30,406 nucleotides of DNA from Schizochytrium sp. TIO01. Lineage: Eukaryota; Protista; Bigyra: Labyrinthulomycetes. The notes beneath the pieces are model-generated. The model saw only the letters and a list, made by a program, of their open reading frames with translations. It ran no database searches and was not told where the DNA came from. Shown here in pieces: positions 421 to 29,130 of the stretch. Location: the NCBI GenBank assembly GCA_004764695.1, contig SMSO01000024.1, positions 1 to 30,406 of the forward strand. Reading direction: 5' to 3'. Position 1 is the stretch's first letter, and each line of letters opens with the position of its first letter. Position numbers and translations under genes: made by a program.

Positions 421-2249
421 ATTCTTATTCATCATATTTATTAATGGTTTTACAATAAAATTTTTAATGAAGAATTAAAAATATTTCTTTCAAAAAATAA
501 AAAGTTTTTATGCGCCTGCTGACATTCGTGGATATGGGAGACTTCAATAAGAATAGCATATAATATGATGGAAGTCCTTTGTCTAATTTGTAAAACTATT
601 TTCTCACCATAATTTAACCTTGATCTTCGATGTGTTGTGAAGCGTTCTAGTGGTGCTTGTATAAAATTTCTACCTATTTGATTGATAGAGTTATGACACT
701 ACAAAGTTTGCCTTTTCTCTTTATTAGTAATATGAGAAACTAAGAAATAACTTTCAAAGTGAAGAAAAACTTGAATAGAATTCTAAGTTTTCTTAATCAA
801 GATAGGTTTCCTGTCGTACATTTCAGCAGCTTTCCGATAGTATCATTCCATGATTAATAGGTGACTGATTGGTTGAGAAAATGAATCTTATGCTAACCAT
901 TTAATTGTATGTCCTCCTGACAATTAGAGTGATAACTAAGACCTTTTCCCTGGAGCTTGCAAAAAGCTTTTCTCTCATCGATCAAATGTGTCCATTTTAG
1001 CCATGTACAAGCTACCGAGTGGTTCTTGTGGAAAAGTTCTACCTACTTTTTTGATTGCGTTAAAACACTACTAAACTCGGTTCTTTCTCCTTATTAATAA
1101 TATGAGAAACTAAGAAATAACTTTCGAAAGTCAATAAAACATAAATAAAATTTTAATTTCTCTTAGCAAACGCTTATACCCTGTTGCAAATCGGCGCCTC
1201 TTTCCAAGGGTACCATTCGATGATTCATATAATACCCTGTTGTGGAGAAAATTAATCTTGTACTAAACATATCCTGCTAACAAATAGAGTGACAGTTTCA
1301 TGTTTTTTTCTCAATCTTGCAAGAATAATTTTTATCATAAATCAAATGCACGCATCTTAACAGTTCATGAACTATTGAATGGTGCTTGCAGCAAATCTCT
1401 GGCTATTGCATTGATAAAGTTAGAACACTACTAAACTCGGTTCTTCCCCCTTTTATTAATATGAAAGACCTAAAAATAAATTTCAAAGGTCAGTAAAAAC
1501 ATAATTATAATTTTATTTTTCTAAATCAACACATCTACCCTGTTCTAAATTGAAGCAGTTTTGCAACGGTACGACGCCATGATTAATATATCTCTCCGTT
1601 GTTGAGGAAATGAATATTATACTAATCATTTTATTCTTTATCCTGCCAACAAAAAGAGTAACAACTTAGACCTTGTTTTCTCAAACTTGAAAAAAGATTT
1701 CCTCTCATATATTAAATGCGGCCATCTCCACAATTCATGCGCTATCGAATGGGGTTTGCAGAAAAGTTCTTTTTATTCTACTCAAGGAGTTAGAACACTA
1801 CTAAACTCGGTTCCTTTCCCATATTAATAATATGAGAGACCAAAGAATAACTTTCAAAGGTCAATAAAGCTGTATGTTAAAAGATTTTTTTCTGAGAAAA
1901 TGCAGCGATCCTGTTGTAGAGCTTAACAGCTTTCCAACGGTATCACTGCATGATCAATATCTTTCTTCGTTGTTGAGAAAATGAATCCTAAAGTAGCAAA
2001 TGTTTTTTTTATCCTACCAATAAACAGAGTAACAACTTGGAGCTTCTTTTCTCAAGCTTGCAAAAATAATTGTATTCATAAATCAGACGCAGTTATCTTA
2101 ACAATTTAGGAGCTATCGAATGCTGCTTGTAGAAAAGTTCTGCCTGCTCTAGTAATAGAGTTAGAACACTTCTAAACTCGGTTCCTCCCCCTATTATTAA
2201 TATGAGAAACAAAGAAATATCTTTCAAAAGTCAATAAAACATAATCATA

Positions 2250-2718
2250 TGTTGTCTAGACGAATTGTTGGTCCCGAGTCGGGATAACAAGGAGTCTCCT
2301 GCCTTTCTAATCATACCTTTTACAGAGGTAGGGTTAGGGTAAAGGTCAAGCATTGGACAACGAAGAGTCTCTTAACTTTCTTATTATACCTTTTGCAGTA
2401 GTAGGGTTAGGGTAATGCTCGTGCATTATATACATGAACACGAGTATTAACCCATAATACCATTGTAAAAGTATCAAAGAACGTAGGAGAATCTTTATCA
2501 AGAAAACAAATATTCACTAAGGGACACATGGACTAAACACTAGTAGTTGCGGTTTTCCGCTCGGTGGCCGCCACTAATAAAGGACATGTGTAACAGAGAC
2601 TGAGTAGAAATAACTTCTTCACTGCCGGCAGTATGTCAGCAGACCTCAAACTATACAACCTCAACCTAAAAAGTAAACAACCTTTCGAGTCTCTGTCACT
2701 CTACAGCATTCAACAAAA
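2250..2718 (+). repeat. 5' LTR (469 bp; TGTTG...CAACA plus AAA)
   Basis: Starts TGTTGTCTAGACG, ends CATTCAACAAAA; direct repeat of 4893-5361. Confidence 0.95.
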
Positions 2719-2731
2719 GGTTATGGGCCCA
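2719..2731 (+). promoter_or_regulatory. Primer-binding site complementary to an internal (anticodon-arm) half of initiator tRNA-Met
   Basis: GGTTATGGGCCCA directly after the 5' LTR; this is the PBS type used by Drosophila copia and yeast Ty5. Confidence 0.9.
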
Positions 2732-2759
2732 AAGTACTCCCGCAGCATCCAGTCCAGAG

Positions 2760-2949
2760 CAGGAGGTGTCAGACCTTATAGACTTTCAGCAGGAGGTGCC
2801 CGATCTTATTAGCATTGATCAGGAGGTGCCTGATCTTATTAGCATTGATCAGGAGGTGCCTGATCTTATTAACATTGATCAGGAGGTGCCCGACGCTACC
2901 ATTATAGAGAAGGAGGTGCCCGATGTTACCATCATTGAGCAGGAGGTGG
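2760..2949 (+). repeat. 30-bp coding minisatellite (about 6.3 copies) encoding QEVPDLISID-like repeats
   Basis: CAGGAGGTG(CC) recurs every 30 bp at 2760, 2790, 2820, 2850, 2880, 2910 (AAGGAGGTG) and 2940. Confidence 0.93.
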
Positions 2950-4985
2950 ACTCTTCACAGAAACCACCGCGTAAGTATAAACAGAAACCGTCTTACTCCT
3001 CCGAGTTCAAGCAAGCTCTTCGTGAATTTGTTGATGCTGGTCCATTATACCCTGGACAAGTTCTACAAATAGCAAACAACAAATTCCATTGGGTAGATCC
3101 AATTCTTGGCGACGTCGACACCGGCTCTACAACAAGAAGTGGTAAAACCTTCCATCCAAGTTCCTCAACTTCAGCCCCAGCTTTATTGACGAAGGAGGTG
3201 AACAATCAGGAAGCTTCTACCTCAAACACTCACGTTTACGAGGACCCACGCAGACCTGTTCGCGAGCCTCGTCACGAAAGTGATCTTCGACTTTACAGCG
3301 ACTATGAGAAAGCTATGTGGAGGAAAACAGATGAAGAAGAAATGGCAAATCATGCAGCACAAGAAACCCTGCAAGAAGTCCCAAAGTCGGAGGTGCGTGG
3401 AAAAGTCTTAGATGTCATGAAGGTCTACAAGAAAAAGCCCGCAGACAACGAAGGGCGCCGTAGACTTAAGATGAGACTTGTTGTTCGCGGTGATCAAGAA
3501 CCAACCTCTGAACAAGAAGTAGCATCACCAGTTACAATGCCATCTTCCGTACGCATCCAAATTACCTTGGGTCTTACACAGGAACATGACTTTGCTATTT
3601 TCGACATTACAAGTGCTTTCCTCACTGCACCGGTACATGACAAAGACATTTTCATACGAGTACGGACTTTCTACGGTGAATACACTTACTATCGCCTTCT
3701 GAAATCTGTCTATGGCATCTCATCTGCTCCGCTAAGATTTTACAAAGAACTAGCGCATGCTTTTGATGCTTTTGGCTTAGCACCTTGCCCAGATGATGCA
3801 TGCCTTTTCCATCATAAGGGCCTGAACCTGACAGTGTCTACCCATGTCGATGATGGTCTAGTTTCTGGTCCTGCCTCGAGTGTCAAAGCTCTTGAAGGTC
3901 ATCTAAAATCATATTTTGGGAACGACAAAGTGGACTTCGAACATTTACCTGACAACAAACGTGTTCGATACCTTGGAGCGCATCTTACGATCAATCGAAG
4001 TTCCAAGATCGCTTTGTTAGATCATGCCGACTTTATTGAGGAACTTCTCGAAACTCATGGTCTTAACAATTGTCAACCACGCATCACTCCTGCATCTGCA
4101 AACCCGTTAACATTTCCTAAGGAGGCCAAAACTGATCCCCTTTATCAGTCATTGGTGGGAAGTCTTCAATGGGTAGTCAATACACGCCCCGACATTGCAT
4201 TTGCAGTTAAAGAACTTGGTAGACACAATCGTGCAGCAACCGAAGAACACTTTACAGCAGCCAAAGCTGTTTTACGTTACCTTGCTGGCACGAGCAACAT
4301 CGGGATAGTCTTACGAGGAGCCATACAACTTTCGGACATAAAGCTTGAAGCTTGGTGCGATGCCTCTTACGCGCCTTGCCCTTACACACGACGTTCTACA
4401 CTTGGCTACCTGCTAGCAGTTAATGGGTCTACCATTCTGACAAAGTCTAGTACAGAACGAACTGTGGCACTTTCCTCAACTGAGGCAGAACTCTACGCTG
4501 CGAACGAAGCCGCTAAAGCCATTATTTGGAACCGTCGCATCTTAGATTTTCTGGGCTGTCCCCAAGCTGATGCATCGCCACTATACACGGACAATCAAGC
4601 TATCATCCCTTTGATTCGAAACTTGAGCGTTGGCAACAACTCTAAGCATGTGGACATTCGCAGACACCATCTTCATCAACTTTTAGAGGACAACATCATT
4701 TCTCTATCTTATGAAAACACTCGGACCAATCCAGCTGACGTGTTGACCAAACACCTTAGTCGGGAGCTTCATCACTATCATATCTACCGCATCTGCCTTG
4801 CTTTTCTTGGGCACGTAACTCCCGGAGATACGGATCGCTCTGTATCTGCACTTCTAGGAACAAGGCTCACGTCTAAGAAGTTTGGGGAGGTGTGTTGTCT
4901 AGACGAATTGTTGGTCCCGAGTCGGGATAACAAGGAGTCTCCTGCCTTTCTAATCATACCTTTTACAGAGGTAGGGTTAGGGTAA
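2766..4985 (+). CDS. pol: Truncated copia pol: integrase-RT linker, reverse transcriptase (RVT_2) and RNase H; no gag, protease or integrase core
   Basis: RT motifs KMRLVVRGDQE, FDITSAFL, LLKSVYGISSAP, HVDDGL; RNase H motifs WCDASYA, VALSSTEAEL, YTDNQA, SKHVDIRRH, NPADVLTK. The ORF-track start is a GTG; the first in-frame ATG is at 3315. The frame runs about 90 bp into the 3' LTR. Confidence 0.92.
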   Translation: MSDLIDFQQEVPDLISIDQEVPDLISIDQEVPDLINIDQEVPDATIIEKEVPDVTIIEQEVDSSQKPPRKYKQKPSYSSEFKQALREFVDAGPLYPGQVLQIANNKFHWVDPILGDVDTGSTTRSGKTFHPSSSTSAPALLTKEVNNQEASTSNTHVYEDPRRPVREPRHESDLRLYSDYEKAMWRKTDEEEMANHAAQETLQEVPKSEVRGKVLDVMKVYKKKPADNEGRRRLKMRLVVRGDQEPTSEQEVASPVTMPSSVRIQITLGLTQEHDFAIFDITSAFLTAPVHDKDIFIRVRTFYGEYTYYRLLKSVYGISSAPLRFYKELAHAFDAFGLAPCPDDACLFHHKGLNLTVSTHVDDGLVSGPASSVKALEGHLKSYFGNDKVDFEHLPDNKRVRYLGAHLTINRSSKIALLDHADFIEELLETHGLNNCQPRITPASANPLTFPKEAKTDPLYQSLVGSLQWVVNTRPDIAFAVKELGRHNRAATEEHFTAAKAVLRYLAGTSNIGIVLRGAIQLSDIKLEAWCDASYAPCPYTRRSTLGYLLAVNGSTILTKSSTERTVALSSTEAELYAANEAAKAIIWNRRILDFLGCPQADASPLYTDNQAIIPLIRNLSVGNNSKHVDIRRHHLHQLLEDNIISLSYENTRTNPADVLTKHLSRELHHYHIYRICLAFLGHVTPGDTDRSVSALLGTRLTSKKFGEVCCLDELLVPSRDNKESPAFLIIPFTEVGLG
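4876..4892 (+). promoter_or_regulatory. Polypurine tract
   Basis: AGAAGTTTGGGGAGGTG-like purine-rich tract directly before the 3' LTR TGTTG at 4893. Confidence 0.8.
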
Positions 4986-5361
4986 AGGTCAAGCATTGGA
5001 CAACGAAGAGTCTCTTAACTTTCTTATTATACCTTTTGCAGTAGTAGGGTTAGGGTAATGCTCGTGCATTATATACATGAACACGAGTATTAACCCATAA
5101 TACCATTGTAAAAGTATCAAAGAACGTAGGAGAATCTTTATCAAGAAAACAAATATTCACTAAGGGACACATGGACTAAACACTAGTAGTTGCGGTTTTC
5201 CGCTCGGTGGCCGCCACTAATAAAGGACATGTGTAACAGAGACTGAGTAGAAATAACTTCTTCACTGCCGGCAGTATGTCAGCAGACCTCAAACTATACA
5301 ACCTCAACCTAAAAAGTAAACAACCTTTCGAGTCTCTGTCACTCTACAGCATTCAACAAAA
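4893..5361 (+). repeat. 3' LTR (469 bp)
   Basis: Same sequence as 2250-2718; followed by TSD TCATA. Confidence 0.95.
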
Positions 5362-7326
5362 TCATAATTTTATTTTTTTCTGAACCAACACATTTACTCT
5401 GTTGTAAATTTAAACAGCTTTCCAGCGGTACCACTCCATGATTAATATATTGCTTCATTATTGAGAAAATTAATCTTATACTAATCATTTTATTCTTTAT
5501 CCTGCCAACAAATAGAGTAACAACCTCGAGCTTTTTTACTCAAGCTTGCAAGCATGTTTTTTATCATAAATCAAATACTCACATCTTAACAGTTCATGCG
5601 CTATCGAGTGGGACTTGTGGCAAAGCTCTGTCTATTCTATTAATAGAGTTAGAACACTACTAAACTCGGTTTCTCTCCCTATTATTAATATGAGAGACAA
5701 AAAATTAACTTTCAAAGGTCAGTAAAAACACATGTTAAAAGTACTTTTCTGAGAAAACACGTCTAACCTCTTGAACAGAGACGCCACTTTCCAACGGTAC
5801 CACCTGATGATTAATATCTTCCCCCGTTGTTGAGAAAATGAACCTTATACTAATTTTCTGTCCTGCTCACAAATAGAGTAACAACTTGGAGCTTTCTTTC
5901 TCAAGCTTGAAAATATATTCTTTCTCACAAATCAAATGCAGGTATCTCACCAATTTATGTGCTATCAACTTATTCCTATAGCAAAGCTTTGGCTATTTTA
6001 TTGACAGAGTTAGAACACTACTAAACTCGGTTCTTTCCCCCTATTATTAATATGAGAGACCAAAGAATAACTTTCAAAGGTCAGTAAAAATAACTTTTAA
6101 AAATATTTTGCCAGAGAAAACCCATCTCCCCTGTCGTAAATTGGATATTCTTTCCAACGGTACCCCTCCATGATTAATATCTTTCCCCGTTGTTGAGAAA
6201 ATGAATCTTATACTCATCATTTAATTCTTTCTTTTGTTATTAAACAGAGTAACAACTTAGAGCTTCTTCTCTCAAGCTTGCAAGAAGCTTTTCTCTCATA
6301 AATCAAACGCGGCCATCTCAACAATTTATGCGCTATTGAGTGATGCTTATAGTAAAGTCCTTTCTATTCTGTTCATAGAGTTAGAACACTACTAAACTCA
6401 GCTCTTTCTCCATATCAATAATATGGGAGACTAAGAAATGTCTTTCAAAAGTCAATAAAACATACTTTAAATTTTGTTTTTTCTGAACCAACACATCTAC
6501 CCTGTTGCAAATGAAAACTGCTTTCCAACGGTACCACTCGATGATTAATATATTGCTCCATTGTTGAGAAAATGAATCTTATACTAAACATTTAATTCTT
6601 TCTTTTGTTATCAAATAGAGTAACAACTTAGAGCTTCTTTTCTCAAGCTTGCAAGAAGCTTTTCTCTCATAAATCAAACGCGGCCATCTCAACAATTTAT
6701 GCGCTATTGAGTGGTTCTTCTAGAAAAGTTCTGCTTACTCTACTCATAGAGTTAAAACACTACTAAACTCGGTTCCTTCCCCCTATTAATAATATGAGAG
6801 ACAAAAAATAAACTTTCAAAGGTCAGTAAAACTATATGTTTAAAGTATTTTTTCGGAGAAATCACATCTACCCTGTTGTAATTTCAAACAGCTTGCCAAT
6901 GGTACCACTCCATGATTTATATATTTCCCCGTTGTTGAGAAAATGCATCTTATACTAATCATTTATTTATTTCTTTTGTTATCAAATAAAGTGACAACTT
7001 AGAGCTTCTTTTCTCAAGCTTGCAAGAAGCTTTTCTCTCATAAATCAAATGCACTCATCTCAAATATTTATGCGCTATCGAAAGATTCTTCCAGAAAAGT
7101 TCTGCTTACTCTACTCATAGAGTTAAAACACTACTAAACTCGGTTCCCTCCCCCTATTAATAATATGAGACACAAAAAATAATCTTTCAAAGGTCAGTAG
7201 AAAAACATTTTAAGAATATTTCAGCTAAGCAAACACCTCAACCCTGTTGTAAATTGCCCCAGCTTTCCAACGGTACCACTCCATGATTTATATACCTCCC
7301 CGTTGTTGAGAAAATGCATCTTATAC

Positions 7327-7795
7327 TTTTGTTGAATGCTGTAGAGTGACAGAGACTCGAAAGGTTGTTTACTTTTTAGGTTGAGGTTGTATAGTTTGAG
7401 GTCTGCTGACATACTGCCGGCAGTGAAGAAGTTATTTCTACTCAGTCTCTGTTACACATGTCCTTTATTAGTGGCGGCCACCGAGCGGAAAACCGCAACT
7501 ACTAGTGTTTAGTCCATGTGTCCCTTAGTGAGTATTTGTTTTCTTGATAGAGATTCTCCTACGTTCTTTGATACTTTTACAGTGGTATTATGGGTTAATA
7601 CTCGTGTTCATGTATATAATGCACGAGCATTACCCTAACCCTACTACTGCAAAAGGTATAATATGAAAGTTAAGAGACTCTTTGTTGTCCAATGCTTGAC
7701 CTTTACCCTAACCCTACCTCTGTAGAAGGTATGATTAGAAAGGCAGGAGACTCCTTGTTATCCCGACTCGGGACCAACAATTCGTCTAGACAACA
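7327..7795 (-). mobile_element. Solo LTR of the same copia family, inverted
   Basis: Reverse complement of the LTR with about 6 substitutions by eye; flanked by TSD TATAC (7322-7326 / 7796-7800) inside the host repeat motif CTTATACTAATC. Confidence 0.95.
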
Positions 7796-8940
7796 TATAC
7801 TAATCATTTATTTATTTCTTTTGTTATCAAACAGAGTGACAACTTAGAGCTTCTTTTCTCAAGCTTGCAAGAACATTTTTTCTCATAAATTAAATGCACT
7901 CATCTGAACACTTCATAAACTATCGAATGATGGTTGTAGAAAAGCTCTGTCGATTGTATTTATAGAGATACAACACTACCAACCCAGTTCCTTCCCCCTA
8001 TTTATAATATGAGAGACAAAAAAAATAATTTTTAAAGGTCAGTAAAATGCATGTTAAAAGTATTTTTTCTGAGAAAACACATTCAATCTGTTGGAAATTC
8101 AACCAGCTTTCCAATAGTACACTTCAATAATTAATATATTATCCCGTTGTTAAGAAAATGAATCTTATACTAACCATTTAATTCTCGGTCCTGCCAATAA
8201 ACAGAGTAATAACTTGGAGCTTCTTTTCTCAAGCTTGACAGGGTCTGTTTTCGCACAAATCAAATTCGGGCATCTCAGCAATTCGTGTTCTAGCAAGAGG
8301 TGCCTATAGCAAAGTTCTTTCTATTCTATTCATAGAGTTAGAGCACTACTAAACTCAGTTCTTTCTCCCTATTAATGATATGGGCGACTAAGAAATAACT
8401 TTCAAAGGTCAGTAAAAATAAATTTTAAAAATATTTCGCCTGAGAAAACACATCTACCCTGTTGCCAATTAAAGCTGCTTTCCAACGGTACCACCTGATG
8501 AGTAATATCTTTCCCCGTTGTTGAGAAAATGAACCTTATACTAATCATTTTGCTGCTCACAAATAGAGTGCCAACTTAGAGCTTCTTTTCTCAGGCTTGC
8601 AAGAAGAGTTTCTCTCATAAATCAAATGCACCCACTTTAACTATTATTCAGCTATCCGACGGTGTTTGTAGCAAAGTTCTGTCTATTATATGCATAGATT
8701 TACAACACTACTAAACTTGTTCCCTCCCCCTATTAATAATATGAGAGACCAAGAAATAACATTCAAAGGTCAATAAAAATAAATTTTAAACATATTTCGC
8801 CTGAGAAAACACATCTCGCCTATTGTAAATCTTAACAGCTTTCCAACGGTACCACCTGATGATTAGTATCTTTAGTGGTTAATGAAATATTGTCCCTTGT
8901 GAGGATCCATCAACTGCTTGTTTAAATAAAGTGATAAGTA

Positions 8941-9965
8941 GGAGCTTCTTTTCGCAAGCTTGAAAACATATTTTCTCGCAACGATTTTATAACTATCCTG
9001 TGGTAACAACGACGCACTTCCCGACGGTGCTTATCGAAAAGACCTAACAATTTTATCAAGAAAGTTATAGCAGTACTAAGTTTAGTTCTTTTCTCTTATT
9101 AATATTATGGAAGAGTAACATTTTCTTTTAAAAGTTCGAAAAATACTTTCAAAGATTTGTTTTTTCGCACTCCTGCCATCATCCGTATTTTATATTGCTT
9201 GCGCTTTCTACTGATCCAAATATTTAAATGATCAATAAAGTACTTGTGGAGATAATGGGGTTTTGAAGAAGTGGGAGGCTGCTGCCAAATTCCTGGAAGG
9301 GTATTTTCTCATAATTTTAGAATGATTTCCTCTTGAGAACTTCAATAGTATAGCTCTCCATAAATTTTCTGATCTAATGGTGCAAAAATAACATGTGTCT
9401 TTCAAGTAGTTGTCGAGAAAATATGTCTTTCTTTCTTTCGATAATCCATCAGTTGTCTGATAAAGTGATCACTTGGAGCTTCTTTCCGCAAGCTTGAAAA
9501 GATATTTCTTCGCAACGATTTTATAACTATCCTGTGGTAACAACGACGCACTTCCCGACGGTGCTTATCGAAAAGACCTAACAATTTTATCAAGAAAGTT
9601 ATAGCAGTACTAAGTTTAGTTCTTTTCTCTTATTAATATTATGGAAGAGTAACATTTTCTTTTAAAAGTTCGAAAAATACTTTCAAAGATTTGTTTTTTC
9701 GCACTCCTGCCATCATCCGTATTTTATATTGCTTGCGCTTTCTACTGATCCAAATATTTAAATGATCAATAAAGTACTTGTGGAGATAATGGGGTTTTGA
9801 AGAAGTGGGAGGCTGCTGCCAAATTCCTGGAAGGGTATTTTCTCATAATTTTAATGATTTCCTCTTGAGAACTTCAATAGTACAGCTCTCCATAAATTTT
9901 CTGATCGAATGGTGCAAGAATAACGTATATCTCTCAAGTAGTTGTCGAGAAAATATGTCTTTCTT
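8941..9965. repeat. Subtelomeric repeat family B, about 533-bp unit, 2 near-identical copies
   Basis: CAACGATTTTATAACTATCCTGTGGTAACAACGACGC at 8979 and 9512; long identical stretches follow. Shares GGAGCTTCTTT..CAAGCTTGAAAA with family A. Confidence 0.9.
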
Positions 9966-9989
9966 TATTTATTCTGAGTTAAACTAAAA

Positions 9990-21242: not shown

Positions 21243-24200
21243 TTATTCAAAAATATAAGGGCCTAGACATCCCAGTGCTCCACGAAAGCCAACGTTTGCA
21301 ACTTCCTGCAAATCAAGCTCTACTTTCTGCGCAGCAAGGTAGTCCTCTTTCGAACTCAGCTCACCAGAGCTGTTAACAGGCCAAGTCTGTGTAAGAAAAC
21401 TATGCTTCACTGAAAACGGCAGACTAAATGCATTGTTTACAACATGCATACAACGAAGTTCACGAGATATCTGTTCAAGCATTTTCCGTCTTGTCTTTGC
21501 AGAGTAAATACGTCGATTTAATCCGACCTCCTCACGCATTTCATCCGTCAACCTCTTGGATATTCTAAAAATCAATAAAAACCAAATAACATGAACTCCG
21601 TTCGTTAGTTAACAGTTTCACGTCATTAAAAGGTACCCACACTATTGCCAGTACAGTTTCACTCATTTACTAATGTTACCGTGCTCTCTGTTAGATCCAC
21701 ACTCAACCAAATAAACAATTTCACAACAAACCTGCAATCACGCTAAGAACATAGGCAAAATAACACACTAGACAACCCACGAAGCAACAAACCAACCAAC
21801 CAAGCCTCGTGTACAAACGAGTCCATAAGCTGCAGTGTTGCTAAGACAACTTACTTGAAAGGTCTCAGCCACCTGTTCATTTCCAGCATCGCAGCCTCTG
21901 CCCTGGCGCCCATGTTGCTAATATTGCTGCGACGAAGACTGTCAATTTGATTGGATGATGGCAAGCGATACATTACACATTACACATTACATTAGATACA
22001 TGGACGTGAGTGATCTAGGTTCGCTTTCAGGATCTCATCTTGTTTTGTTGTCATTTTGCTCTTTGTTCAATGGATGCATACTCAGTCAAACAGACAACTT
22101 ATTCATCTATCAAACACACAGCCGATTCTCTAAACAAACAAAAAAGAGATTGCATAGAATTGCAAAACAACACGGACCCACCCACCAAACAACAAAGCAA
22201 ACATCATGTACAAACAAGCCCATGAGCTGCGGTGTTGCGTAGACAACTCACTCAAGTGATGTCAGCGACCGGTTCTCTTTCAGCGCCGCAGCCACTGCCT
22301 TGGCGCCCTCTGAAGCGATATCGTTCTCATCAAGACTGTCGATTTGATTGAATGATGGCAAGCATTACATTAGATGGCATTAGATGCACGCATGCATGCA
22401 AGGACATGAGTGATCTAGTTTGGCTTTCAGGATTTCTTTTTTGTTGTGTTGTCCTTTTGCTCTTTGTTCGATGGATGTATACTCACTCAAACAGACAACC
22501 CATCCATCCATCAAACAAACAAGCCATTGCATAAACTTGCAAACAACACCGACCCACCCACCAAACAACAAACCAAACATCATGTACAAACAAGTCCACG
22601 AGCTGCGGTGTTGCGTCGAGAACTTACTGAAGTGATATGAGCGACTGGTTCTCTTTCAGCGCCGCAGCAACTGCCTTGGCGCCCTCGTCGCCGACCACGT
22701 TGCATTCAAGACTGTCGATTTGATTTAAGGATGCCAAGCAATACATTACATGGCATTAGATGCACGCATGGATGCATGGTCATGAGTGATCTAGGTTGAC
22801 TTTCAGGACTTCATCTTTCTTTGTTGTCATTTTGCTCTTTGTTCGATGGGTGCATGCTCAGCCAAACAGGACACTTATCCATCCATCAAACAAGCAAACA
22901 AGAAAATCCATGAACTTGCAAAGCGACACCGTGCAAAGCCCACCGTGCAAAGAAACACACCAACGAAGCAAGCATCATGTACAAACAAGTTCATGAGCTG
23001 CGGTGTTGCGAATGCAACTTACTTGAGTGATGTCAGCGACCGGTTCTCTTTCAGCGCCGCAGCCACTACATTGGCGCCCTCGTCGCCGATCTGGTTGTTC
23101 TCAAGACTGTTGATTTGATTGAATTATGTATGGCAAGCAATACATTACACATTCCACATTAGATACATCGATGGATGTGAGTGATCTAGGTTGGCTTTCA
23201 GGATTTCATCTTTCTTTGTTGTCATTTTGCTCTTTGTTCAATGGACGCATACTCAGTCAAACAGGCCCCTTATTCATTCATCAAACAAGCAAACAAGAGA
23301 TTGCATGAACTTGCAAAACAACACCCACCAACCAACAAAGCAAGCATCATGTACAAACAAGTCCATGAGCTGCGGTGTTGCGTAGACAACTTACGATAGT
23401 GACGTCAGCGACCGGTTCTCTTTCAGCGCCGCACCCACTGCCTTCGCGCCCTCTGAGCCGATATTGTTATACCCAAGACTGTCGATTTCATTGAAATGAT
23501 GGCAAGCAATACATTACATTACATTACAATAGATGCACGCATGCACGCATGGACGTGAGTGATCTAGGTTGGCTTTCAGGATTTCATCTTTGTTGTAATG
23601 TCATTTTCCTCTCTGTTCGATGAATCCATACTCAGTCAAACAGGCCACTTATCCATTCATCAAACAAGAATTTGCATGAACTTGCAAAGCGACACCGTGC
23701 AAAGCACATCGACCCAAAAAATAACACCAAACAAGCAAGCATCATGTACAAACAGGTTCATAAGCTGCGGTGTTGCGAAGACAACTTACGATAGTGATGT
23801 CAGCGACCGGTTCTCTTTCAGCGCCGCAGCCACTGCCTTGGCGCCCTCTGCGCCGATATCATTGCCCAAAAGACTGTCGATTTGATTTAACGATGGCAAG
23901 CAATACATTTCACATTGCATTAGATGCACGACGCATGCATGGACGTGAGTGATCTATGTCGGCTTTCAGGACTTCATCTTCGTTGTGTTGTCATTTTGCT
24001 CTTTGTTCGATGGATGCATACTCCGTCAAACAGACAACTTATCCATCCACCGAACAAACAGCCGATTGCATAAACTTTTAAAACAACACCGACCCACCCA
24101 CCAATCAACAGAACAAGCATCATGTACAAACAGGTTCATAAGCTGCAGTGTTGCTAAAACAACTTACGATAGTGATATCAGTGAGCGGTTATCTTTCAGC

Positions 24201-27200
24201 GCCGCAGCCACTGCCTTGGCGCCCTCCGAGCCGATTTTGTTTTTTCGAAGACTGTCGATTTGATTGAATGATGGCAAGCAATACATTACACGTTACATAT
24301 TACAATAGATGCATGCATGCATGCATGGACGTGAGTGATCTAGGTTGGATTTCAGGATTTCATCTTTGTTGTGTTGTCATTTTGCTCTTTGTTCGATGGA
24401 TGCATACTCAAGTCAAACAGACAACTTATCTATCCATCAAACAAACAAGCGATTGCATAAACTTGCAAAACACACCTACCAAAATAACAACCAAGAACTA
24501 ACAAACGAGCCTCATGTACGAACAAGTTCATGAGCTGCGGTGTTGCGAATACAACTTACTTGAGTGATGTCAGCGACCGATTCTCTTTCAGCGTCGCAGC
24601 CACTGCCTTGGCGCCATCGTCGCCGATCTTGTTATCATCAAGACTGTCGATTTGATTGAATGATGGCAAGCAATACATCACATAACACATAACACATAAT
24701 ATTAGACACATGCGTGGACGTGAGAAATCTAGGTTGGCTTTCAAGATTCCATCTTCGTTGTTATGACATTTTTCTCTTCGTTCAATGGGTGCATACTCAG
24801 TCAAACACGCCACTTATTCATCCATCAAACATGCAAATAAGAGATTGCATGGACTTGCAACGTGACACCCTGCAAAGCCCACCGTGCAAAACAACACATC
24901 AACAAAGCAAGCATCATGTACGAGCAAGTCCATGAGCTGCGGTGTTGCGAATACAACTTACGATAGTGATGTCAGCGACCGGTTCTCTTTCAGCGCCGCA
25001 GCCACTGCCTTGGCGCCCTCTGAACCGATCTCGTTGACACCAAGACTGTCGATTTGATTGAATGATGGCAAGCAATATGTTACACATTACATTGCATTAG
25101 ATGCATGCATGCATGCATGGACGTGAGTGATCTAGGTTGGCTTTCAGGACTTTACCTTTGTTGTATTGTCATTTTCCTCTTTGTTCCATGGATGCATACT
25201 CAAGTCAAACAGACAACTTATCTATCCATCAAACAAACAAGCGATTCCATAAACTTGCTAAACAACACCAACCCATCTACCAACCAACAAAGCAAGCATC
25301 ACGTACGAGCAAGTGCATGAGCTGTGGTGTTGCGAATACAACTTACTTGAGTGATGTCAGCGACCGGTTCTCTTTCAGCGCCACAGCCACTGCCTTGGCG
25401 CCCTCTGAGCCGATCTTGTTATAATCAAGACTGTCGATTTGATTGAATGATGGCAAGCAATACATTTCATTAGATTAGATGCACGCATGCATGAATGGAC
25501 GTGAGTGATCTAGATTGGCTTTCAGGATTTCATCTTTGTTGTATTGTCATTTTGCTCTTTGTTCGATGGATGTATACTCGGTCAAACAGACAATTCATCC
25601 GTCCATCAAACAAACAAACAAAGAAGCGAGCGCATAAATTTGCAAAACAACACCGACCAAAAAATCACACCAAACAAGCAAGCATCATGTACAAACAAGT
25701 CCATGAGCTGCGGTATTGCGTAGACAACTTACGATAGTGATGTCAGCGACCGGTTCTCTTTCAGCGCCACAGTCACTGCCTTGGCGCCCTCGTCGCCGAT
25801 CACGTTGCATTCAAGACTGTCGATTTGATTTAAGGATGCCAAGCAATACATTACATGGCATTAGATGTACGCATGCATGCATGGACGTGAGTGATCTGTG
25901 TTGGCTTTTAGGACTTCAACTTCGTTGTGTTGTCATTTTGTTCTTTGTTCGATGGATGCATACTCCGTGAAACAGACAACTTATACACCCATCAAACAAA
26001 CAAGCAATTGCATAAACTCGCAAAACAACACCGATCCACCCACCAATCAACAGAACAAGCATCATGTACAAACAAGTTCATAAGCTGCAGTGTTGCTAAG
26101 ACAACTTACGATAGTGATGTCAGCGACCGGTTCTCTTTCAGCGCCGCAGCCACTGCCTTGGCGCCCTCTGAACCGATCTCGTTGACACCAAGACTGTCGA
26201 TTTGATTGAATGATACATGACACATTACATATTACATGTTACATTAGATACATGCATGGACGTGAGTGATCTAGGCTGGCTTTCAGGATTTCATCTTTGT
26301 TGTATTGTCACTTTCCTCTTTGTTCGATGGATGCATACTCAGTCAAGCAGACAACTTATGCATCCATCAAACAAACAAGCAATTACATAAACTCGCAAAG
26401 CGAGACCGTGCAAAGCAACACACCAACGAAGCAAGCATCATGTACAAGCAAGTCCATAAGTTGCAGTGTTGCAAAGACAACTTACGATAGTGATATCAGC
26501 GACCGGTTCTCTTTCAGCGCCGCAGCCACTGCCTTGGCGCCCTCTGAGCCGATATTGTTTTCTCCAAGACTGTCGATTTGATTGAATGATGGCAAGTAAA
26601 ACATTGCACATTGCATTAGAGGCACGAATGCATGCATGAACGTGAGTGATCTAGGTTGGCTTTCAGGATTTATCTTTGTTGTGTTGTCATTTTGCTGTAC
26701 ATTCGATGGATGCATACTCACTCAAACAGACAACTTATCCATCTATCAAACACACAGCCGATTCCCTAAACAAACAAAAAAGAGATTGCATAGAATTGCA
26801 AAACAACACGGACCCACCCGCCAAACAACAAAGCAAACATCATGTACAAACAAGTCAATGAGCTGCGGTGTTGCGTAGACAACTTACTTGAGTGATGTCA
26901 GCGACTGGTTCTCTTTCAGCACCGCAGCCACTGCCTTGGCGCCCTCTGAGCCGATATAATTGCCCCAAAGACTGTCGATTTGATTGAATGATGGCAAGCA
27001 GTACAATACAGTGCATCCGATGCATGCATGCATGGACGTGAGTGATCTAGGTTGGCTTTCAGGATTTCATCTTTGTTGTGTTGTCATTTTCCTCTTTGCT
27101 CGATGGATGCATACTCAGTCAAACAGACAACTTATCCATCCATCAAACAAACAAGCGATTGCATAAACTTGCAAAACAACACCGACCAAAATAACAACCA

Positions 27201-28398
27201 ACGAAGCAAGCATCATGTACGAACAATTTCATGAGCTGCGGTGTTGCGTGGACAACTTACGATAGTGATATCACCGACTGGTTCTCTTTCAGCGCCGCAG
27301 CCACTGCCTTGGCGCCCTCTGAGCCGATATTGTTGCGCTGAAGACTGTCGATTCGATTGAATGATGGCAAGCAATACAATACAGTGCACCCGATGCACAC
27401 ACGCATGAACGTGAGTGATCTAGGTTGGCTTTCAGGATTTATCTTTGTTGTGTTGTCATTTTGCTCTTTGCTCGATGGATGTATACTCACTCAAACAGAC
27501 AACTTATCCATCCATCCATTCATCAAACAAACAAACAAACAAACACGCGATTGCATAAACTTGCAAAACAACACCGACCCACCCACCGAACAACAAAGCA
27601 AGCATCATGTACAAACAAGTCCACGAGCTGCGGTGTTGCAAAGACAACTTACGATAGTGATGTCAGCGACCGGTTCTCTTTCAGCGCCGCAGCCACTGCC
27701 TTGGCGCCCTCGTCGCCGATATCATTCCAAGAAAGACTGTCGATTTGATTGAATGATGGCAAGTAAAACATTGCACATTGCATGAGAGGCACGCATGCAT
27801 GCATAAATGTGAGTGATCTAGGTTGGCTTTCAGGATTTATCTTTGTTGTGTTGTCATTTTCCTCTTTGTTCGATGGATGCATACTCACTCAAACAGACAA
27901 CTTATCCATCCATCCATCCATCCATCAAACAAACAAACAAACAAGCAAACAAGCGATTGCATAAATTTGCAAAACAACACCGACCCACCCACCAAACAAC
28001 AAAGCAAGCCTCATGTACTTGTTTGTACATGAGCTGCGGTATTGCGTAGACAACTTACTCAAGTGATGTCAGCGACTGGTTCTCTTTCAGCGCCACAGCC
28101 ACTGCCTTGGCGCCCTCGTCGCCGATTTTGTTGCCAGTAAGACTGTCGATTCGATTGAATGATGGCAAGCAATACAATATAGTGCACCCGATGCACACAT
28201 GCATGAACGTGAGTGATCTAGGTTGGCTTTCAGGATTTATCTTTGTTGTGTTGTCATTTTGCTCTTTGCTCGATGGATGTATACTCACTCAAACAGACAA
28301 CTTATCCATCCATCCATCCATCCATCAAACAAACAAACAAACAAACAAACAAGCGATTGCATAAATTTGCAAAACAAGAATGACAAAAGCAACACCGT

Positions 28399-28460
<62 letters not shown>

Positions 28461-28537
28461 GTGTTAACTTACTCTAAAGTTGTAGCGCCATTCTGAAGCT
28501 GTTCAAGAGCAGCGAGAACACGTGGGTGGTCCGACAT
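21243..28537 (-). CDS. Spliced leucine-rich-repeat protein (RI-like/NLRC3-type LRR), 19 exons, about 604 aa, 17 one-LRR-per-exon modules
   Basis: Exon 1 28537-28473 (MSDHPRVLAALEQLQNGATTL+GA). 84-nt exons: 28142-28059, 27736-27653, 27344-27261, 26971-26888, 26569-26486, 26193-26110, 25816-25733, 25430-25347, 25045-24962, 24643-24560, 24251-24168, 23873-23790, 23478-23395, 23106-23023, 22711-22628, 22335-22252, 21938-21855. Last exon 21564-21243 (ISKRLTDEMREEVGLN...GPYIFE*). LRR acceptors are ACAG, donors GTAAGT (one GTGAGT), last acceptor TTTTTAG. All introns phase 2, 288-330 nt. Total 1815 nt = 605 codons with no internal stop. Consensus xLxxNxIGSEGAKAVAAALKENRSLTSL. The C-terminal exon assignment is the least certain part. 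Confidence 0.88.
21800..28400. repeat. Tandem exon+intron array, 17 units of about 372-406 bp
   Basis: Conserved intron blocks GTGAGTGATCTAGGTTGGCTTTCAGGA, GTTCGATGGATGCATACTC, CATCATGTACAAACAAG, with (CAAA)n, (CCAT)n and (ATGC)n micro-repeats. Confidence 0.95.
28400..28460. repeat. (GCAA)n microsatellite in intron 1 of the LRR gene
   Basis: About 15 copies, ending 12 bp from the exon-1 donor. Confidence 0.95.
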
Positions 28538-29006
28538 CGCAGCAAGTAAAGATCTATACCTTTACCAGCGAGCGCGTGCGTGTGCCTTTTCAGCTAAGCT
28601 CGTGGCACAGTCCCAGTCGTTGCAGAAGGTTTCGAACCTGCTGGACGTAAAGCTGCAAGTCGATGACAGAGTTGTGCACTTACTGAGTTACTATGGTTTC
28701 CCCTAAGAAGGAGATGTTTTTTAGTGCTCTCGAAGAGAAAGGATATTTTACTATTACGAACCTAACCTTGCCTACTCAGCCTCGGGTTCTGCATGTGCTG
28801 ACCTCCTTTCTTTCTCGCTCTTTCAAGACTATTACTATTCCCTAAAGCCTACTCCTAGAATAAGTTTTGCAGGGATGCTTGCTGCAGAGGTTCCACTACC
28901 ACTCTCTCCTAATACTATCTATCTTGCACCTAAGTCGTCAAAAAAGTAAGTAAGTGACTATCAAACTAATGATAGGTATAAATCCATCATGCACCCTCTC
29001 TTCAGC

Positions 29007-29124
29007 ACATTCGATCATACCACGCGGGTAACACCTCATCTCATTCGCACTGAGAAGTAAAGTCGCGTAGGGCCGGGTCAGTAGTATGATAGGGGACTGC
29101 ATGCGAAGCCCCGGTGTTGAATGT
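29007..29124 (+). rRNA. 5S rRNA
   Basis: 118 nt; 5' ACATTCGA pairs with 3' TTGAATGT (helix I). Internal CATACC, ATCTCATTCGCAC and TCAGTAGTATGATAGGGGAC match the eukaryotic 5S pattern. Followed by a T run. Confidence 0.92.
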
Positions 29125-29130
29125 TTTTTT
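29124..29130 (+). terminator. RNA polymerase III oligo-T terminator of 5S
   Basis: T7 run at the 5S 3' end, with more T runs at about 29135-29145. Confidence 0.85.

What the first reader, a model, noticed from the sequence alone, without database searches (positions are those of the whole stretch)
21243..28537. The rDNA 'spacer repeat' is an intact one-LRR-per-exon gene: candidate subtelomeric variable LRR receptor system
Seen: what looks like a 390-bp satellite between 18S and 5S is 17 exon+intron cassettes. Each exon is exactly 84 nt (one 28-aa RI-type LRR), bounded by ACAG/GT(A/G)AGT, all phase 2. They are framed by a unique ATG exon and a unique terminal exon that join in frame (1815 nt, no stops). 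Symmetric exons mean any module can be added, lost, swapped or skipped without a frameshift. Known: one-LRR-per-exon arrays with exon shuffling were proposed as immune-like receptors in the brown alga Ectocarpus (ROCO LRR-GTPases); lamprey VLRs are built from LRR cassettes; subtelomeres host variable gene families such as var and VSG. As I recall, Aurantiochytrium has rDNA plus long repeats (LORE-TEARS) at essentially all chromosome ends, treated as spacers. Inference: each chromosome end may carry a different version of this gene, giving a recombining recognition repertoire, possibly against viruses or other parasites.
Basis: partly seen in the sequence, partly recalled or inferred. Interest (0 to 1): 0.95.

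Follow-up and report, generated by a model that had tools for sequence, protein, structure and literature searches.

The report
Hypervariable LRR gene inside rDNA spacer
A 385-base repeat between the 5S and 18S rRNA genes at a chromosome end of an Aurantiochytrium-type protist was published as a non-coding spacer, but it is a spliced gene with one leucine-rich repeat per 84-base exon, and almost every chromosome end carries its own version that differs mainly at the predicted binding surface.

Summary
On the minus strand, 28537 to 21243, lie a 65-nt ATG exon, 17 exons of exactly 84 nt and a 322-nt terminal exon. All introns are phase 2, and the total is 1815 nt with no stop. Each 84-nt exon is one RI-type LRR (Pfam LRR_6).

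RNA-like public runs show joints exactly at the predicted GT..AG borders, and a DNA run shows none. An MMETSP transcript joins an LRR exon to the tail exon.

The genome holds at least 40 copies. In the 21 I read there are 3 to 20 LRR exons per copy, 278 in all, and none has a stop. Variation sits in four codons per repeat (diversity 0.5-0.7). Introns (0.11) and framework codons (mostly 0.02-0.15) are kept alike. The variable codons never form stops (44 expected) and avoid hydrophobic residues.

The 106-residue tail is helical, matches no known family, and recurs in two distant LRR+tail proteins.

"Different version per chromosome end" is supported. "Receptor" and "immune" remain untested, and this gene has no signalling domain. 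COR-TIR ORFs lie near several sister copies.

The scan found this family before on other DNA of this genome (s1-828315, s1-834050 and others). The paper that named these repeats, and two later papers I searched, mention no gene here.

The parts
28473..28537 (-). Exon 1: ATG plus 21 codons plus 2 bases (MSDHPRVLAALEQLQNGATTL); a half-LRR-like N-terminal cap
   Evidence: The same 65-nt exon is open in 19 of the 20 other copies read. L007 has one extra C.
28143..28472 (-). Intron 1 (330 nt), with (CAAG)15 and (CAAA)n microsatellites
28059..28142 (-). LRR exon 1 (84 nt)
   Evidence: Pfam LRR_6 at 24.9 bits, above the cut-off of 23.4.
27653..27736 (-). LRR exon 2
   Evidence: Pfam LRR_6 at 27.9 bits.
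27261..27344 (-). LRR exon 3
26888..26971 (-). LRR exon 4
26486..26569 (-). LRR exon 5
   Evidence: The exon bin has about 15 times the depth of the DNA run in RNA-like run X1.
26110..26193 (-). LRR exon 6
   Evidence: The donor edge at 26110 is used in many joints.
25733..25816 (-). LRR exon 7
   Evidence: The joint 25816->26110 skips exactly the predicted 293-nt intron, with ends CT..AC. It is seen in 4 contigs of X1 and 1 of X7, and in none of DNA run X19.
25347..25430 (-). LRR exon 8
   Evidence: Joint 25430->26110.
24962..25045 (-). LRR exon 9 (same peptide as exon 6)
24560..24643 (-). LRR exon 10
24168..24251 (-). LRR exon 11
23790..23873 (-). LRR exon 12
   Evidence: Joints at 23873 and 23790. 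A loose end of X5 at 23866 carries the 3' end of an exon 1.
23395..23478 (-). LRR exon 13
23023..23106 (-). LRR exon 14
   Evidence: Joint 23106->23790.
22628..22711 (-). LRR exon 15
22252..22335 (-). LRR exon 16 (donor GTGAGT)
   Evidence: The donor edge at 22252 is joined to a tail exon in X1.
21855..21938 (-). LRR exon 17: a divergent repeat (LRRSNISNMGARAEAAMLEMNRWLRPF), shared only with the copy on C5
   Evidence: No Pfam hit. RNA-like depth is very low in X1 and X7.
21243..21564 (-). Terminal exon: 1 base plus 106 codons plus TAA; a helical tail of no known family
   Evidence: Contigs X1 record 2 and X5 record 17 match 21321-21564 with 1 and 3 differences and leave the DNA exactly at 21564.
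29007..29125 (+). 5S rRNA gene, head to head with the LRR gene, 470 nt from its ATG
16358..18140 (-). 18S rRNA gene, downstream of the LRR gene and in the same direction (3.1 kb from its stop codon)

Best explanation
Shown: the 'Group 0 LORE-TEAR' repeat is the exon-intron array of a real, spliced gene. It is presumably read by RNA polymerase II, because it is spliced. It sits between the 5S gene and the 18S-28S unit. Its product is a 604-residue soluble protein with a 21-residue cap, 17 ribonuclease-inhibitor-type LRRs (one per 84-nt exon) and a 106-residue helical tail. It is one of at least 40 sister genes, roughly one per rDNA-bearing chromosome end.

Inferred mechanism: the roughly 300-nt introns are 90-95% alike, and all exons are 84 nt in the same phase. 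Unequal crossing-over or gene conversion with breakpoints in the introns can therefore add, remove or swap whole repeats without breaking the frame. The same exchange keeps the introns and framework codons alike (concerted evolution). Selection on the protein keeps four codons per repeat diverse. In the LxxLxLxxNxIG motif these are the codon split by the intron, the two codons before the Asn and the one after it. They are the canonical ligand-contact positions of the concave face.

Most likely role (inferred, untested): a germline repertoire of intracellular binding modules with different surfaces. It may work together with the COR-TIR ORFs that lie next to several sister copies, and with the LRR-kinase genes that earlier notes of this scan report at the same chromosome ends (I did not check those).
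For: Gene model.

Splicing:
- In RNA-like runs X1, X5 and X7 the joints fall exactly on predicted borders with CT..AC ends. The joint 25816->26110 skips 293 nt. DNA run X19 shows none of the listed joints.
- Exon bins have 10-15 times the DNA depth, and intron bins 0.2-0.4 times.
- Two contigs leave the DNA exactly at the tail acceptor, 21564.
- MMETSP transcript protein P0004 reads LRR exon, then split codon, then tail.

Family: at least 40 copies of each unique end, at 82-99% identity, and about 73 tail copies at 55% identity or more, only 2 with a stop.

Coding signal:
- 278 LRR exons in 21 copies are all 84 nt with no stop, while introns range from 259 to 515 nt.
- One further unit has only a GT-to-AT donor change.
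- The tail has 253 inferred changes, 9.4 stops expected and none seen (P about 7e-5), and no frameshift. By contrast 9 of 13 gaps in the last intron are not multiples of three.
- The tail has 41 invariant residues against 24.9 expected, and they are the same residues that are conserved in the distant homologues P0002 and P0008.

Focused variation:
- Diversity is 0.50-0.72 at most bases of the variable codons, against 0.111 in introns and mostly 0.02-0.15 in framework codons.
- From the base frequencies 44 stops are expected there and none is seen.
- 95% of the residues are polar, charged or aromatic.
- There are 143 distinct triplets.
- Pairs with introns under 0.5% different keep identical variable codons (83%). 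At 0.5-1.5% intron distance the variable codons already differ at 46% of bases, and framework bases at 4%.

Fold:
- Single exons pass the Pfam LRR_6 cut-off.
- The model of homologue P0008 is an LRR solenoid (pLDDT 85) whose strands cover the residues before and at the split codon.
- The nearest solved proteins are LRRC34, ribonuclease inhibitor, DRC5 and NLRPs.

Context: ORFs of about 855 aa with COR-A and TIR_2 lie 2-10 kb upstream of several sister copies on the same strand.
Against: - No ligand, phenotype or protein-level evidence exists.
- Framework codons and the tail have pN/pS of about 0.8-0.85, so purifying selection is weak or masked by concerted evolution.
- pN/pS at the variable codons is only 1.0-1.3, because they are saturated, so a formal positive-selection test is lacking.
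- The runs are only guessed to be RNA and are short contigs. They cannot be assigned to this copy, cannot show full-length mRNA, and cannot separate exon skipping from paralogues.
- Exon 17 of this copy has almost no RNA-like depth in two of the three runs.
- This gene has no signalling domain.
- No COR, TIR or kinase hit was listed on this contig.
Confidence: 0.6

Rival explanations
1. It is a real, expressed gene family, but not a recognition repertoire. An LRR gene was captured in the subtelomeric rDNA unit and spread with it to all chromosome ends. Surface positions vary because they are unconstrained, and repeat number varies because subtelomeres recombine. The protein has a housekeeping role (nucleolar, rDNA or telomere-related, or ciliary like many RI-type LRR proteins) or hardly any role.
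For: - pN/pS is about 0.8 in framework codons and in the tail.
- The gene has no signalling domain.
- The nearest solved relatives include nucleolar or axonemal LRRC34, DRC5 and RSP15.
- The gene is tied to the rDNA unit.
- Repeat numbers from 3 to 20 are tolerated.
Against: - Neutral sites lying 1-3 bases from homogenised framework bases should be co-converted, yet they stay saturated.
- Stops (44 expected, none seen) and hydrophobic residues are filtered out at exactly these codons.
- The variable positions are the canonical contact positions of LRRs.
- COR-TIR ORFs lie next to sister copies.
Confidence: 0.27
2. The diversity at the four codons comes from a directed DNA process, either targeted hypermutation or templated micro-conversion from a cassette store (possibly somatic, as in lamprey VLRs), and not from selection on ordinary mutations.
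For: - All three codon positions, and a silent third base next to the split codon (diversity 0.66), are variable.
- Whole trinucleotides at the exon end are swapped (ATC/TGA/CAA) beside identical introns.
- Divergence at the variable codons jumps from 0 to 0.46 with no intermediate steps.
Against: - The variable bases lie on both sides of a 300-nt intron, so they are adjacent only in the mRNA.
- Near-identical copy pairs keep the variable codons unchanged in 83% of pairs.
- No base bias of the kind a deaminase or a diversity-generating retroelement leaves was noticed.
- Avoidance of stops and hydrophobic residues needs selection in any case.
Confidence: 0.08
3. It is a non-coding spacer repeat after all. 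The open frames and splice-like motifs are relics of a dead gene, and the transcripts are spacer noise.
For: - The published description treats it as a spacer with no similarity to GenBank.
- Some RNA-like depth falls on introns.
- The terminal exon evolves about as fast as its intron.
Against: - 278 of 278 exons are 84 nt and open.
- 20 of the 21 copies read are intact.
- GTAAGT is kept in 271 of 278 donors.
- Splicing falls at the predicted sites.
- The tail is conserved in distant species.
Confidence: 0.03

Closest known systems
Group 0 LORE-TEAR of Aurantiochytrium limacinum (Collier et al., bioRxiv 10.1101/2023.06.15.545109; Curr Biol 2023)
   Same: [quoted passage not shown] The layout of this window matches, with a telomere, then Group 2 and Group 1 repeats, then 28S-18S read towards the telomere, then 5S about 11 kb further in.
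   Different: [quoted passage not shown] It mentions no gene, exon or LRR. Here it is shown to be a spliced protein-coding gene.
Ectocarpus LRR-ROCO genes (Zambounis et al. 2012, PMC3341825; brown-algal ROCOs, PMC11378527)
   Same: Both are in stramenopiles. Both have one LRR per exon, exons of one length and phase, exon shuffling and copy-number change, and variation concentrated on the concave face. The Ectocarpus genes were proposed as immune-type receptors.
   Different: The Ectocarpus exons are 72 nt (24 residues, 'typical' LRR) and are joined to a ROC-COR GTPase. Here the exons are 84 nt (28 residues, RI type) and are joined only to a helical tail. The genes lie inside rDNA spacers at chromosome ends, and their introns evolve in concert. 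COR-TIR ORFs are neighbours of some sister copies, but they are not shown to be part of this gene.
Ribonuclease inhibitor and the LRR domains of NLR proteins (RI-like LRR class, Pfam LRR_6)
   Same: They share the 28-residue repeat with the motif LxLxxNxIGxxGAxxLAxALxxNxxL. The sequence relatives among solved structures are RNH1, LRRC34 and NLRPs. To my knowledge the mammalian genes also have modular exons in one phase.
   Different: To my knowledge the mammalian exons hold two repeats (57 residues), and RNH1 is single-copy. No NACHT or NB-ARC domain is present here.
Subtelomeric variant gene families (var, VSG, Giardia VSP; interB genes beside the subtelomeric rDNA of Encephalitozoon)
   Same: They are multi-copy families at chromosome ends whose copies differ from one another and show signs of exchange between ends.
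   Different: The protein class is different and predicted to be intracellular. The gene lies inside the rDNA unit itself. Exclusive expression of one copy has not been tested. This comparison rests on general knowledge and on the paper's remark about Encephalitozoon rDNA.
Lamprey variable lymphocyte receptors
   Same: They also use LRR cassettes that give variable concave surfaces.
   Different: VLRs are assembled somatically from non-exon cassettes. Here the cassettes are ordinary exons of germline genes, and no sign of somatic change was seen.

Membership tests
RI-type leucine-rich repeat proteins (Pfam LRR_6, PF13516) | A repeat of 28-29 residues that matches the LRR_6 profile above Pfam's cut-off | tested here: met
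   Two single exons score 24.9 and 27.9 bits against a cut-off of 23.4, and a third scores 16.2. Divergent exon 17 has no hit.
RI-type leucine-rich repeat proteins (Pfam LRR_6, PF13516) | A strand-helix solenoid fold | tested here: inconclusive
   The joined product was not folded. The natural homologue P0008 (LRRs plus the same tail) folds as six strand-helix turns with pLDDT 85.
NLR / STAND receptors | A NACHT or NB-ARC NTPase domain in the same protein | tested here: not met
   Exon 1 and the tail have no Pfam hit, and all other exons are LRRs.
ROCO proteins | A ROC-COR tandem in the same protein | tested here: not met
   No COR-A hit was listed on contig C23. COR-A and TIR_2 ORFs lie near sister copies on other contigs, but are not shown to be spliced to them.
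Cassette-exon LRR genes of the Ectocarpus type | One repeat per exon, with equal exon length and one intron phase | tested here: met
   17 of 17 exons here and 278 of 278 in 21 copies are 84 nt with phase-2 introns.
Cassette-exon LRR genes of the Ectocarpus type | Cassette gain, loss and shuffling between paralogues | tested here: met
   There are 3-20 exons per copy. Near-identical pairs differ by whole units (13 vs 16, and 19 vs 18). Units are duplicated at non-adjacent places. Exon ends are swapped beside identical introns.
Cassette-exon LRR genes of the Ectocarpus type | Positive selection at concave-face residues by codon site models | tested here: inconclusive
   Diversity there is 5-7 times that of introns, and stops and hydrophobic residues are filtered out. 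However, pN/pS is 1.0-1.3 because the sites are saturated. No codeml-type test was run.
Subtelomeric contingency gene families | Location near telomeres, with copies that differ | tested here: met
   The gene lies 21-28 kb from the telomere repeat at 1-421. Many copies lie 2-40 kb from contig ends. 18 of the 21 arrays are distinct.
Subtelomeric contingency gene families | Switching or exclusive expression of one copy | not testable with these tools
   Only short contigs of public runs were available.
VLR-like somatic assembly | Somatic rearrangement of cassettes | not testable with these tools
   No single-cell or clonal long-read DNA was available. Stability of the variable codons in recent duplicates argues against fast change.

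The most novel reading that the evidence does not exclude
Every rDNA-bearing chromosome end of this protist carries its own LRR gene. Together with the neighbouring COR-TIR ORFs (and, per earlier notes of this scan that I did not check, LRR-kinase-ubiquitin-ligase genes), these genes form a germline immune-type recognition repertoire. It is diversified by cassette exchange through near-identical introns. It is physically coupled to the recombination that keeps subtelomeric rDNA uniform. It may be aimed at the resident mirusviruses, or expressed one end at a time.
Probability: 0.25. Interest if true: 0.95.

Novelty: new variant of a known kind. Interest (0 to 1): 0.82.

Why it matters
- It changes the reading of a published genome feature. 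At least one class of 'LORE-TEAR' spacers, thought to serve chromosome-end maintenance, is a large family of protein-coding genes.
- It puts a spliced, presumably RNA polymerase II, gene inside the rDNA unit, between a 5S gene (polymerase III) and the 18S-28S unit (polymerase I), at almost every chromosome end.
- It is an unusually clean natural case of extreme variation confined to four codons per repeat, set against a background of concerted evolution that includes the introns. This makes it a good system for studying how exon cassettes and gene conversion build binding repertoires.
- It gives a second stramenopile example of one-LRR-per-exon genes, after the Ectocarpus ROCO genes.
- With a culturable host that carries mirusviruses, the immune hypothesis can be tested directly.

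Tried and rejected
- **Joined product.** I did not build, search or fold the 604-residue joined product. Exons were checked one by one.
- The source organisms and gene structure of P0002 and P0008 therefore stay unknown.
- **Tail.** It has no Pfam hit, no PDB sequence hit, no Foldseek PDB match with E <= 0.001 and no usable ESM Atlas hit. No relative was found in viral contigs or JGI metagenome contigs.
- **Kinase search.** A Pkinase search of the genome listed only canonical kinases. It could not test the scan's note of an LRR-kinase gene just beyond this window.
- **Telomere search.** The listing was cut off after two contigs. I could not settle whether copies inside multi-Mb contigs are truly internal or are chromosome ends joined in the assembly.
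- **Other repeat classes.** The other repeat classes in this window (371- and 411-bp units, 1010-11629) show no long open frames and were not pursued.
- **Intronic RNA genes.** Rfam found nothing inside the array, so I dropped the idea that the introns host snoRNAs.
- **Exon skipping.** Joints that skip several exons may come from paralogues, so I make no claim about exon skipping.
Full report
**Place and layout.** The window is the first 30.4 kb of contig C23 of a 64-Mb assembly. It starts with a telomere repeat, (AACCT)n, at 1-421. The 28S, 5.8S and 18S genes lie on the minus strand at 12608-18140, and a 5S gene lies on the plus strand at 29007-29125. Tandem Repeats Finder reports a repeat of 376-395 bp in about 16 copies at 22160-28314. 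This layout, and the unit sizes of the other repeats, match the chromosome ends of Aurantiochytrium limacinum. [quoted passage not shown] The words leucine and LRR do not occur in that paper, nor in two later papers on the species.

**Observation.**
- The gene is on the minus strand. A pattern scan finds exactly 17 stretches of CAG + 84 nt + GT[AG]AG, all open in the frame that begins at their second base.
- Upstream lies a 65-nt exon, 28537-28473: ATG, 21 codons, then GA|gtaagt.
- Downstream, after ttttag, a 322-nt exon (21564-21243) runs open to TAA.
- No split codon is a stop.
- The sum is 1815 nt.
- I checked the frame piece by piece.

**It is a coding gene, not a relic.** Both unique ends of the gene occur at least 40 times in the genome, at 82-99% identity. 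That figure is the scoring cap of the search. A protein search finds about 73 tail copies at 55% identity or more, and only two have a stop. I fetched 20 sister copies.
- In the 21 copies there are 278 LRR exons. Every one is 84 nt and open, while introns range from 259 to 515 nt.
- The only irregular unit has an intact exon whose donor reads AT instead of GT.
- Donors are GTAAGT in 271 of 278, and acceptors are GACAG in 257 of 278.
- Nineteen of the 20 sister copies have an open exon 1. L007 has one extra C in a C run, which is either a frameshift or an assembly error.
- All 21 copies have an open tail of 105-111 codons behind a conserved acceptor.
- In the tail a parsimony count gives 253 changes. 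About 9.4 of them should have made stops, and none did (P about 7e-5). No copy is frameshifted, whereas 9 of 13 gaps in the last intron and 17 of 22 in the 3' flank are not multiples of three.

**It is transcribed and spliced.** No listed holder of this sequence is on record as RNA. Eighteen runs from eight studies and seven organism labels are guessed to be RNA. They hold 7-12% of the stretch's words and total 25-49 million letters of contigs. Six unclassified runs that I take to be DNA (63-127 million letters) hold 28-37%. I laid three RNA-like runs and one of these DNA-like runs on 21050-27049.
- The RNA-like runs show joints whose two sides are predicted exon edges and whose skipped part ends CT..AC, which is GT..AG on the gene strand. 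The clearest is 25816->26110, exactly intron 6 (293 nt), in four contigs of X1 and one of X7. Others are 25430->26110, 23106->23790 and 23873->26110.
- The DNA run has none of the listed joints.
- Exon bins have 10-15 times the depth of the DNA run, and intron-only bins 0.2-0.4 times.
- Two contigs match the tail of this copy (or its 97-99% identical sisters on C5 and C7) with 1 and 3 differences. They leave the genome exactly at 21564, the first base after the acceptor.
- A loose end of X5 carries the end of an exon 1 joined to an LRR exon.
- Independently, the only close database relatives of the tail are MMETSP transcripts. One of them (P0004) reads the end of an intron, then an LRR exon, then the split codon, then the tail.

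The limits of this evidence are as follows. The runs are only guessed to be RNA. They are short contigs. They cannot be assigned to one copy. Joints that skip several exons may come from paralogues. Exon 17 of this copy has almost no depth in X1 and X7.

**What the protein is.**
- Single exons pass the Pfam cut-off for LRR_6, the ribonuclease-inhibitor type.
- Exon 1 looks like the helical half of a repeat.
- No signal peptide, membrane segment or catalytic domain was found.
- The tail has no Pfam, PDB or Foldseek relative. It is predicted as two long helices at moderate confidence (pLDDT 72).
- Among 1.84 billion representative proteins the tail matches three clusters only. One is the species' own transcripts. 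The other two are at 35% and 41% identity (P0002, P0008), and their proteins are again RI-type LRRs followed by this tail and a stop. LRR+tail is therefore an old, complete architecture and not a truncated gene.
- The tail's 41 invariant residues (24.9 expected) are those conserved in the distant homologues.
- A model of P0008 (pLDDT 85) is a six-turn LRR solenoid followed by a long helix.
- By sequence its LRRs are nearest to LRRC34, ribonuclease inhibitor, DRC5, NLRPs and RanGAP.

**Where the copies differ.**
- Nucleotide diversity among the 278 exons is 0.50-0.72 at most bases of four codons: the two after the first Leu, the one after the Asn, and the codon split by the intron. A fifth codon is dimorphic (Ser/Asp).
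- Diversity is 0.111 in the aligned introns and mostly 0.02-0.15 in the other codons.
- In the motif L-x-L-x-x-N-x-I-G these four are the x positions. They are the canonical ligand-contact residues of LRR proteins. In the P0008 model the strand covers the residues before and at the split codon.
- There are 143 different triplets at the three main positions.
- From the base frequencies 44 stop codons are expected at these codons among the 236 distinct exons, and none occurs. T at the second codon base is rare (2-6%), so 95% of the residues are polar, charged or aromatic. Both facts need selection on the protein.
- pN/pS there is only 1.0-1.3, because the sites are saturated. In framework codons it is about 0.8, and in the tail 0.85. 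I therefore claim focused diversity with protein-level filtering, not a formal proof of positive selection.

**How it probably evolves.**
- Units whose introns differ by less than 0.5% have identical variable codons in 83% of pairs. Nearly all such pairs come from three near-identical copy pairs. This argues against a fast mutator.
- At 0.5-1.5% intron distance the variable codons already differ at 46% of bases, while framework bases differ at 4%.
- The simplest reading is concerted evolution of the whole unit, with selection preserving old diversity at the contact codons.
- Silent bases inside or beside these codons are also diverse, as expected for tightly linked old variants.
- Near-identical copies differ by whole units (13 vs 16 exons, and 19 vs 18) and by swapped exon ends beside identical introns.
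- Within arrays, units are duplicated at non-adjacent places.
- Recombination in the near-identical 300-nt introns explains all of this. Because every exon is 84 nt with phase-2 introns, such recombination never breaks the frame.
- Outside the three near-identical pairs, copies share almost no identical exon. Eighteen of the 21 sampled arrays are distinct.

**Context.** Earlier notes of this scan describe the same family on other DNA of this genome. They also describe a second cassette family joined to a kinase and a ubiquitin-ligase-like module, and a link to ROC-COR-TIR genes. I tested only the last lead.
- COR-A (26 hits) and TIR_2 (42 hits) co-occur in open frames of about 855 aa.
- Several of these lie 2-10 kb upstream of sister copies on the same strand, for example on C36, C24, C35, C7 and C32.
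- None is listed on C23.
- Whether they are spliced to LRR exons is unknown.
- This raises the odds of an immune-type role for the whole neighbourhood, but it does not show one for this gene.

**Verdict.** The gene and the 'different version at each end' idea are supported. 'Receptor' and 'immune' remain hypotheses. The closest known kind is the Ectocarpus one-LRR-per-exon ROCO family. This case differs from it in several ways:
- the repeat type is different;
- there is no GTPase in this gene;
- the gene sits inside the rDNA unit at nearly every chromosome end;
- hypervariable contact codons contrast sharply with homogenised introns.

I rate it a new variant of a known kind, of high interest.

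Noticed in passing
window 2766-4985 (+), with 73-nt direct repeats at 2292-2427 and 4935-5070: A 739-codon open frame with a copia-type reverse transcriptase domain (Pfam RVT_2, E 5e-18) is inserted among the telomere-proximal 371-bp repeats. It accounts for the extra ~2.6 kb between the telomere and the 28S gene compared with the published median.
   Followed up: partly
G000, about 95 places, e.g. C14:71533-71859, C5:33810-34100, C30:15170-15460: Tail-like open frames fall into three identity tiers against the transcript tail: 70-90%, 55-65% and 39-42%. The two lower tiers, about 18 places each and mostly near contig ends, may belong to other cassette families, perhaps as the helical linker of the LRR-kinase genes noted by the scan.
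   Followed up: no
G000: C36:4985776-4987158, C24:4063894-4065282, C35:2644413-2645810, C7:37534-38925, C32:39531-40925 and others: Open frames of about 855-873 aa hold both COR-A and TIR_2. There are at least 20 of them, many subtelomeric and on the same strand as a nearby 385-bp-type LRR gene. On C35 one lies between an exon 1 and a tail that are 18 kb apart.
   Followed up: partly
window 22173-27993, minus strand, 7 places: A G-rich motif, GGTGGGTGGGTCGG, recurs in the introns on the coding strand (7 matches against 0.03 expected). It may be the G-quadruplex signal that the LORE-TEARS paper reports in these repeats.
   Followed up: partly
window 21855-21938: The last LRR exon of this copy is a divergent repeat shared only with the copy on C5. 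It has almost no depth in two of the three RNA-like runs, although the DNA run covers it. In about nine of the other sampled copies the last repeat is instead a '...KVNWSLTLL/SL' or '...KENWSLTLL' type, possibly a C-terminal cap.
   Followed up: partly
window 28538-29006: Only 470 nt separate the ATG of the LRR gene from the 5S gene on the other strand. The stop codon lies 3.1 kb upstream of the 18S gene in the same direction. Genes for three different polymerases are therefore packed together.
   Followed up: no
G000 contigs C31, C24, C6, C13: Copies occur in head-to-head pairs about 42 kb apart inside multi-Mb contigs (e.g. C31 at 3.168 and 3.210 Mb), as if two chromosome ends were joined at their telomeres in this assembly. 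Small contigs (C10, C17-C19) duplicate ends of large ones.
   Followed up: no
L007 (G000:C10), exon 1; L016 (G000:C4), unit at locus position 6074-6755: These are the only defects seen in 21 copies. One is an extra C in exon 1 of L007. The other is a GT-to-AT donor change in L016, which would make one cassette skip in frame.
   Followed up: yes
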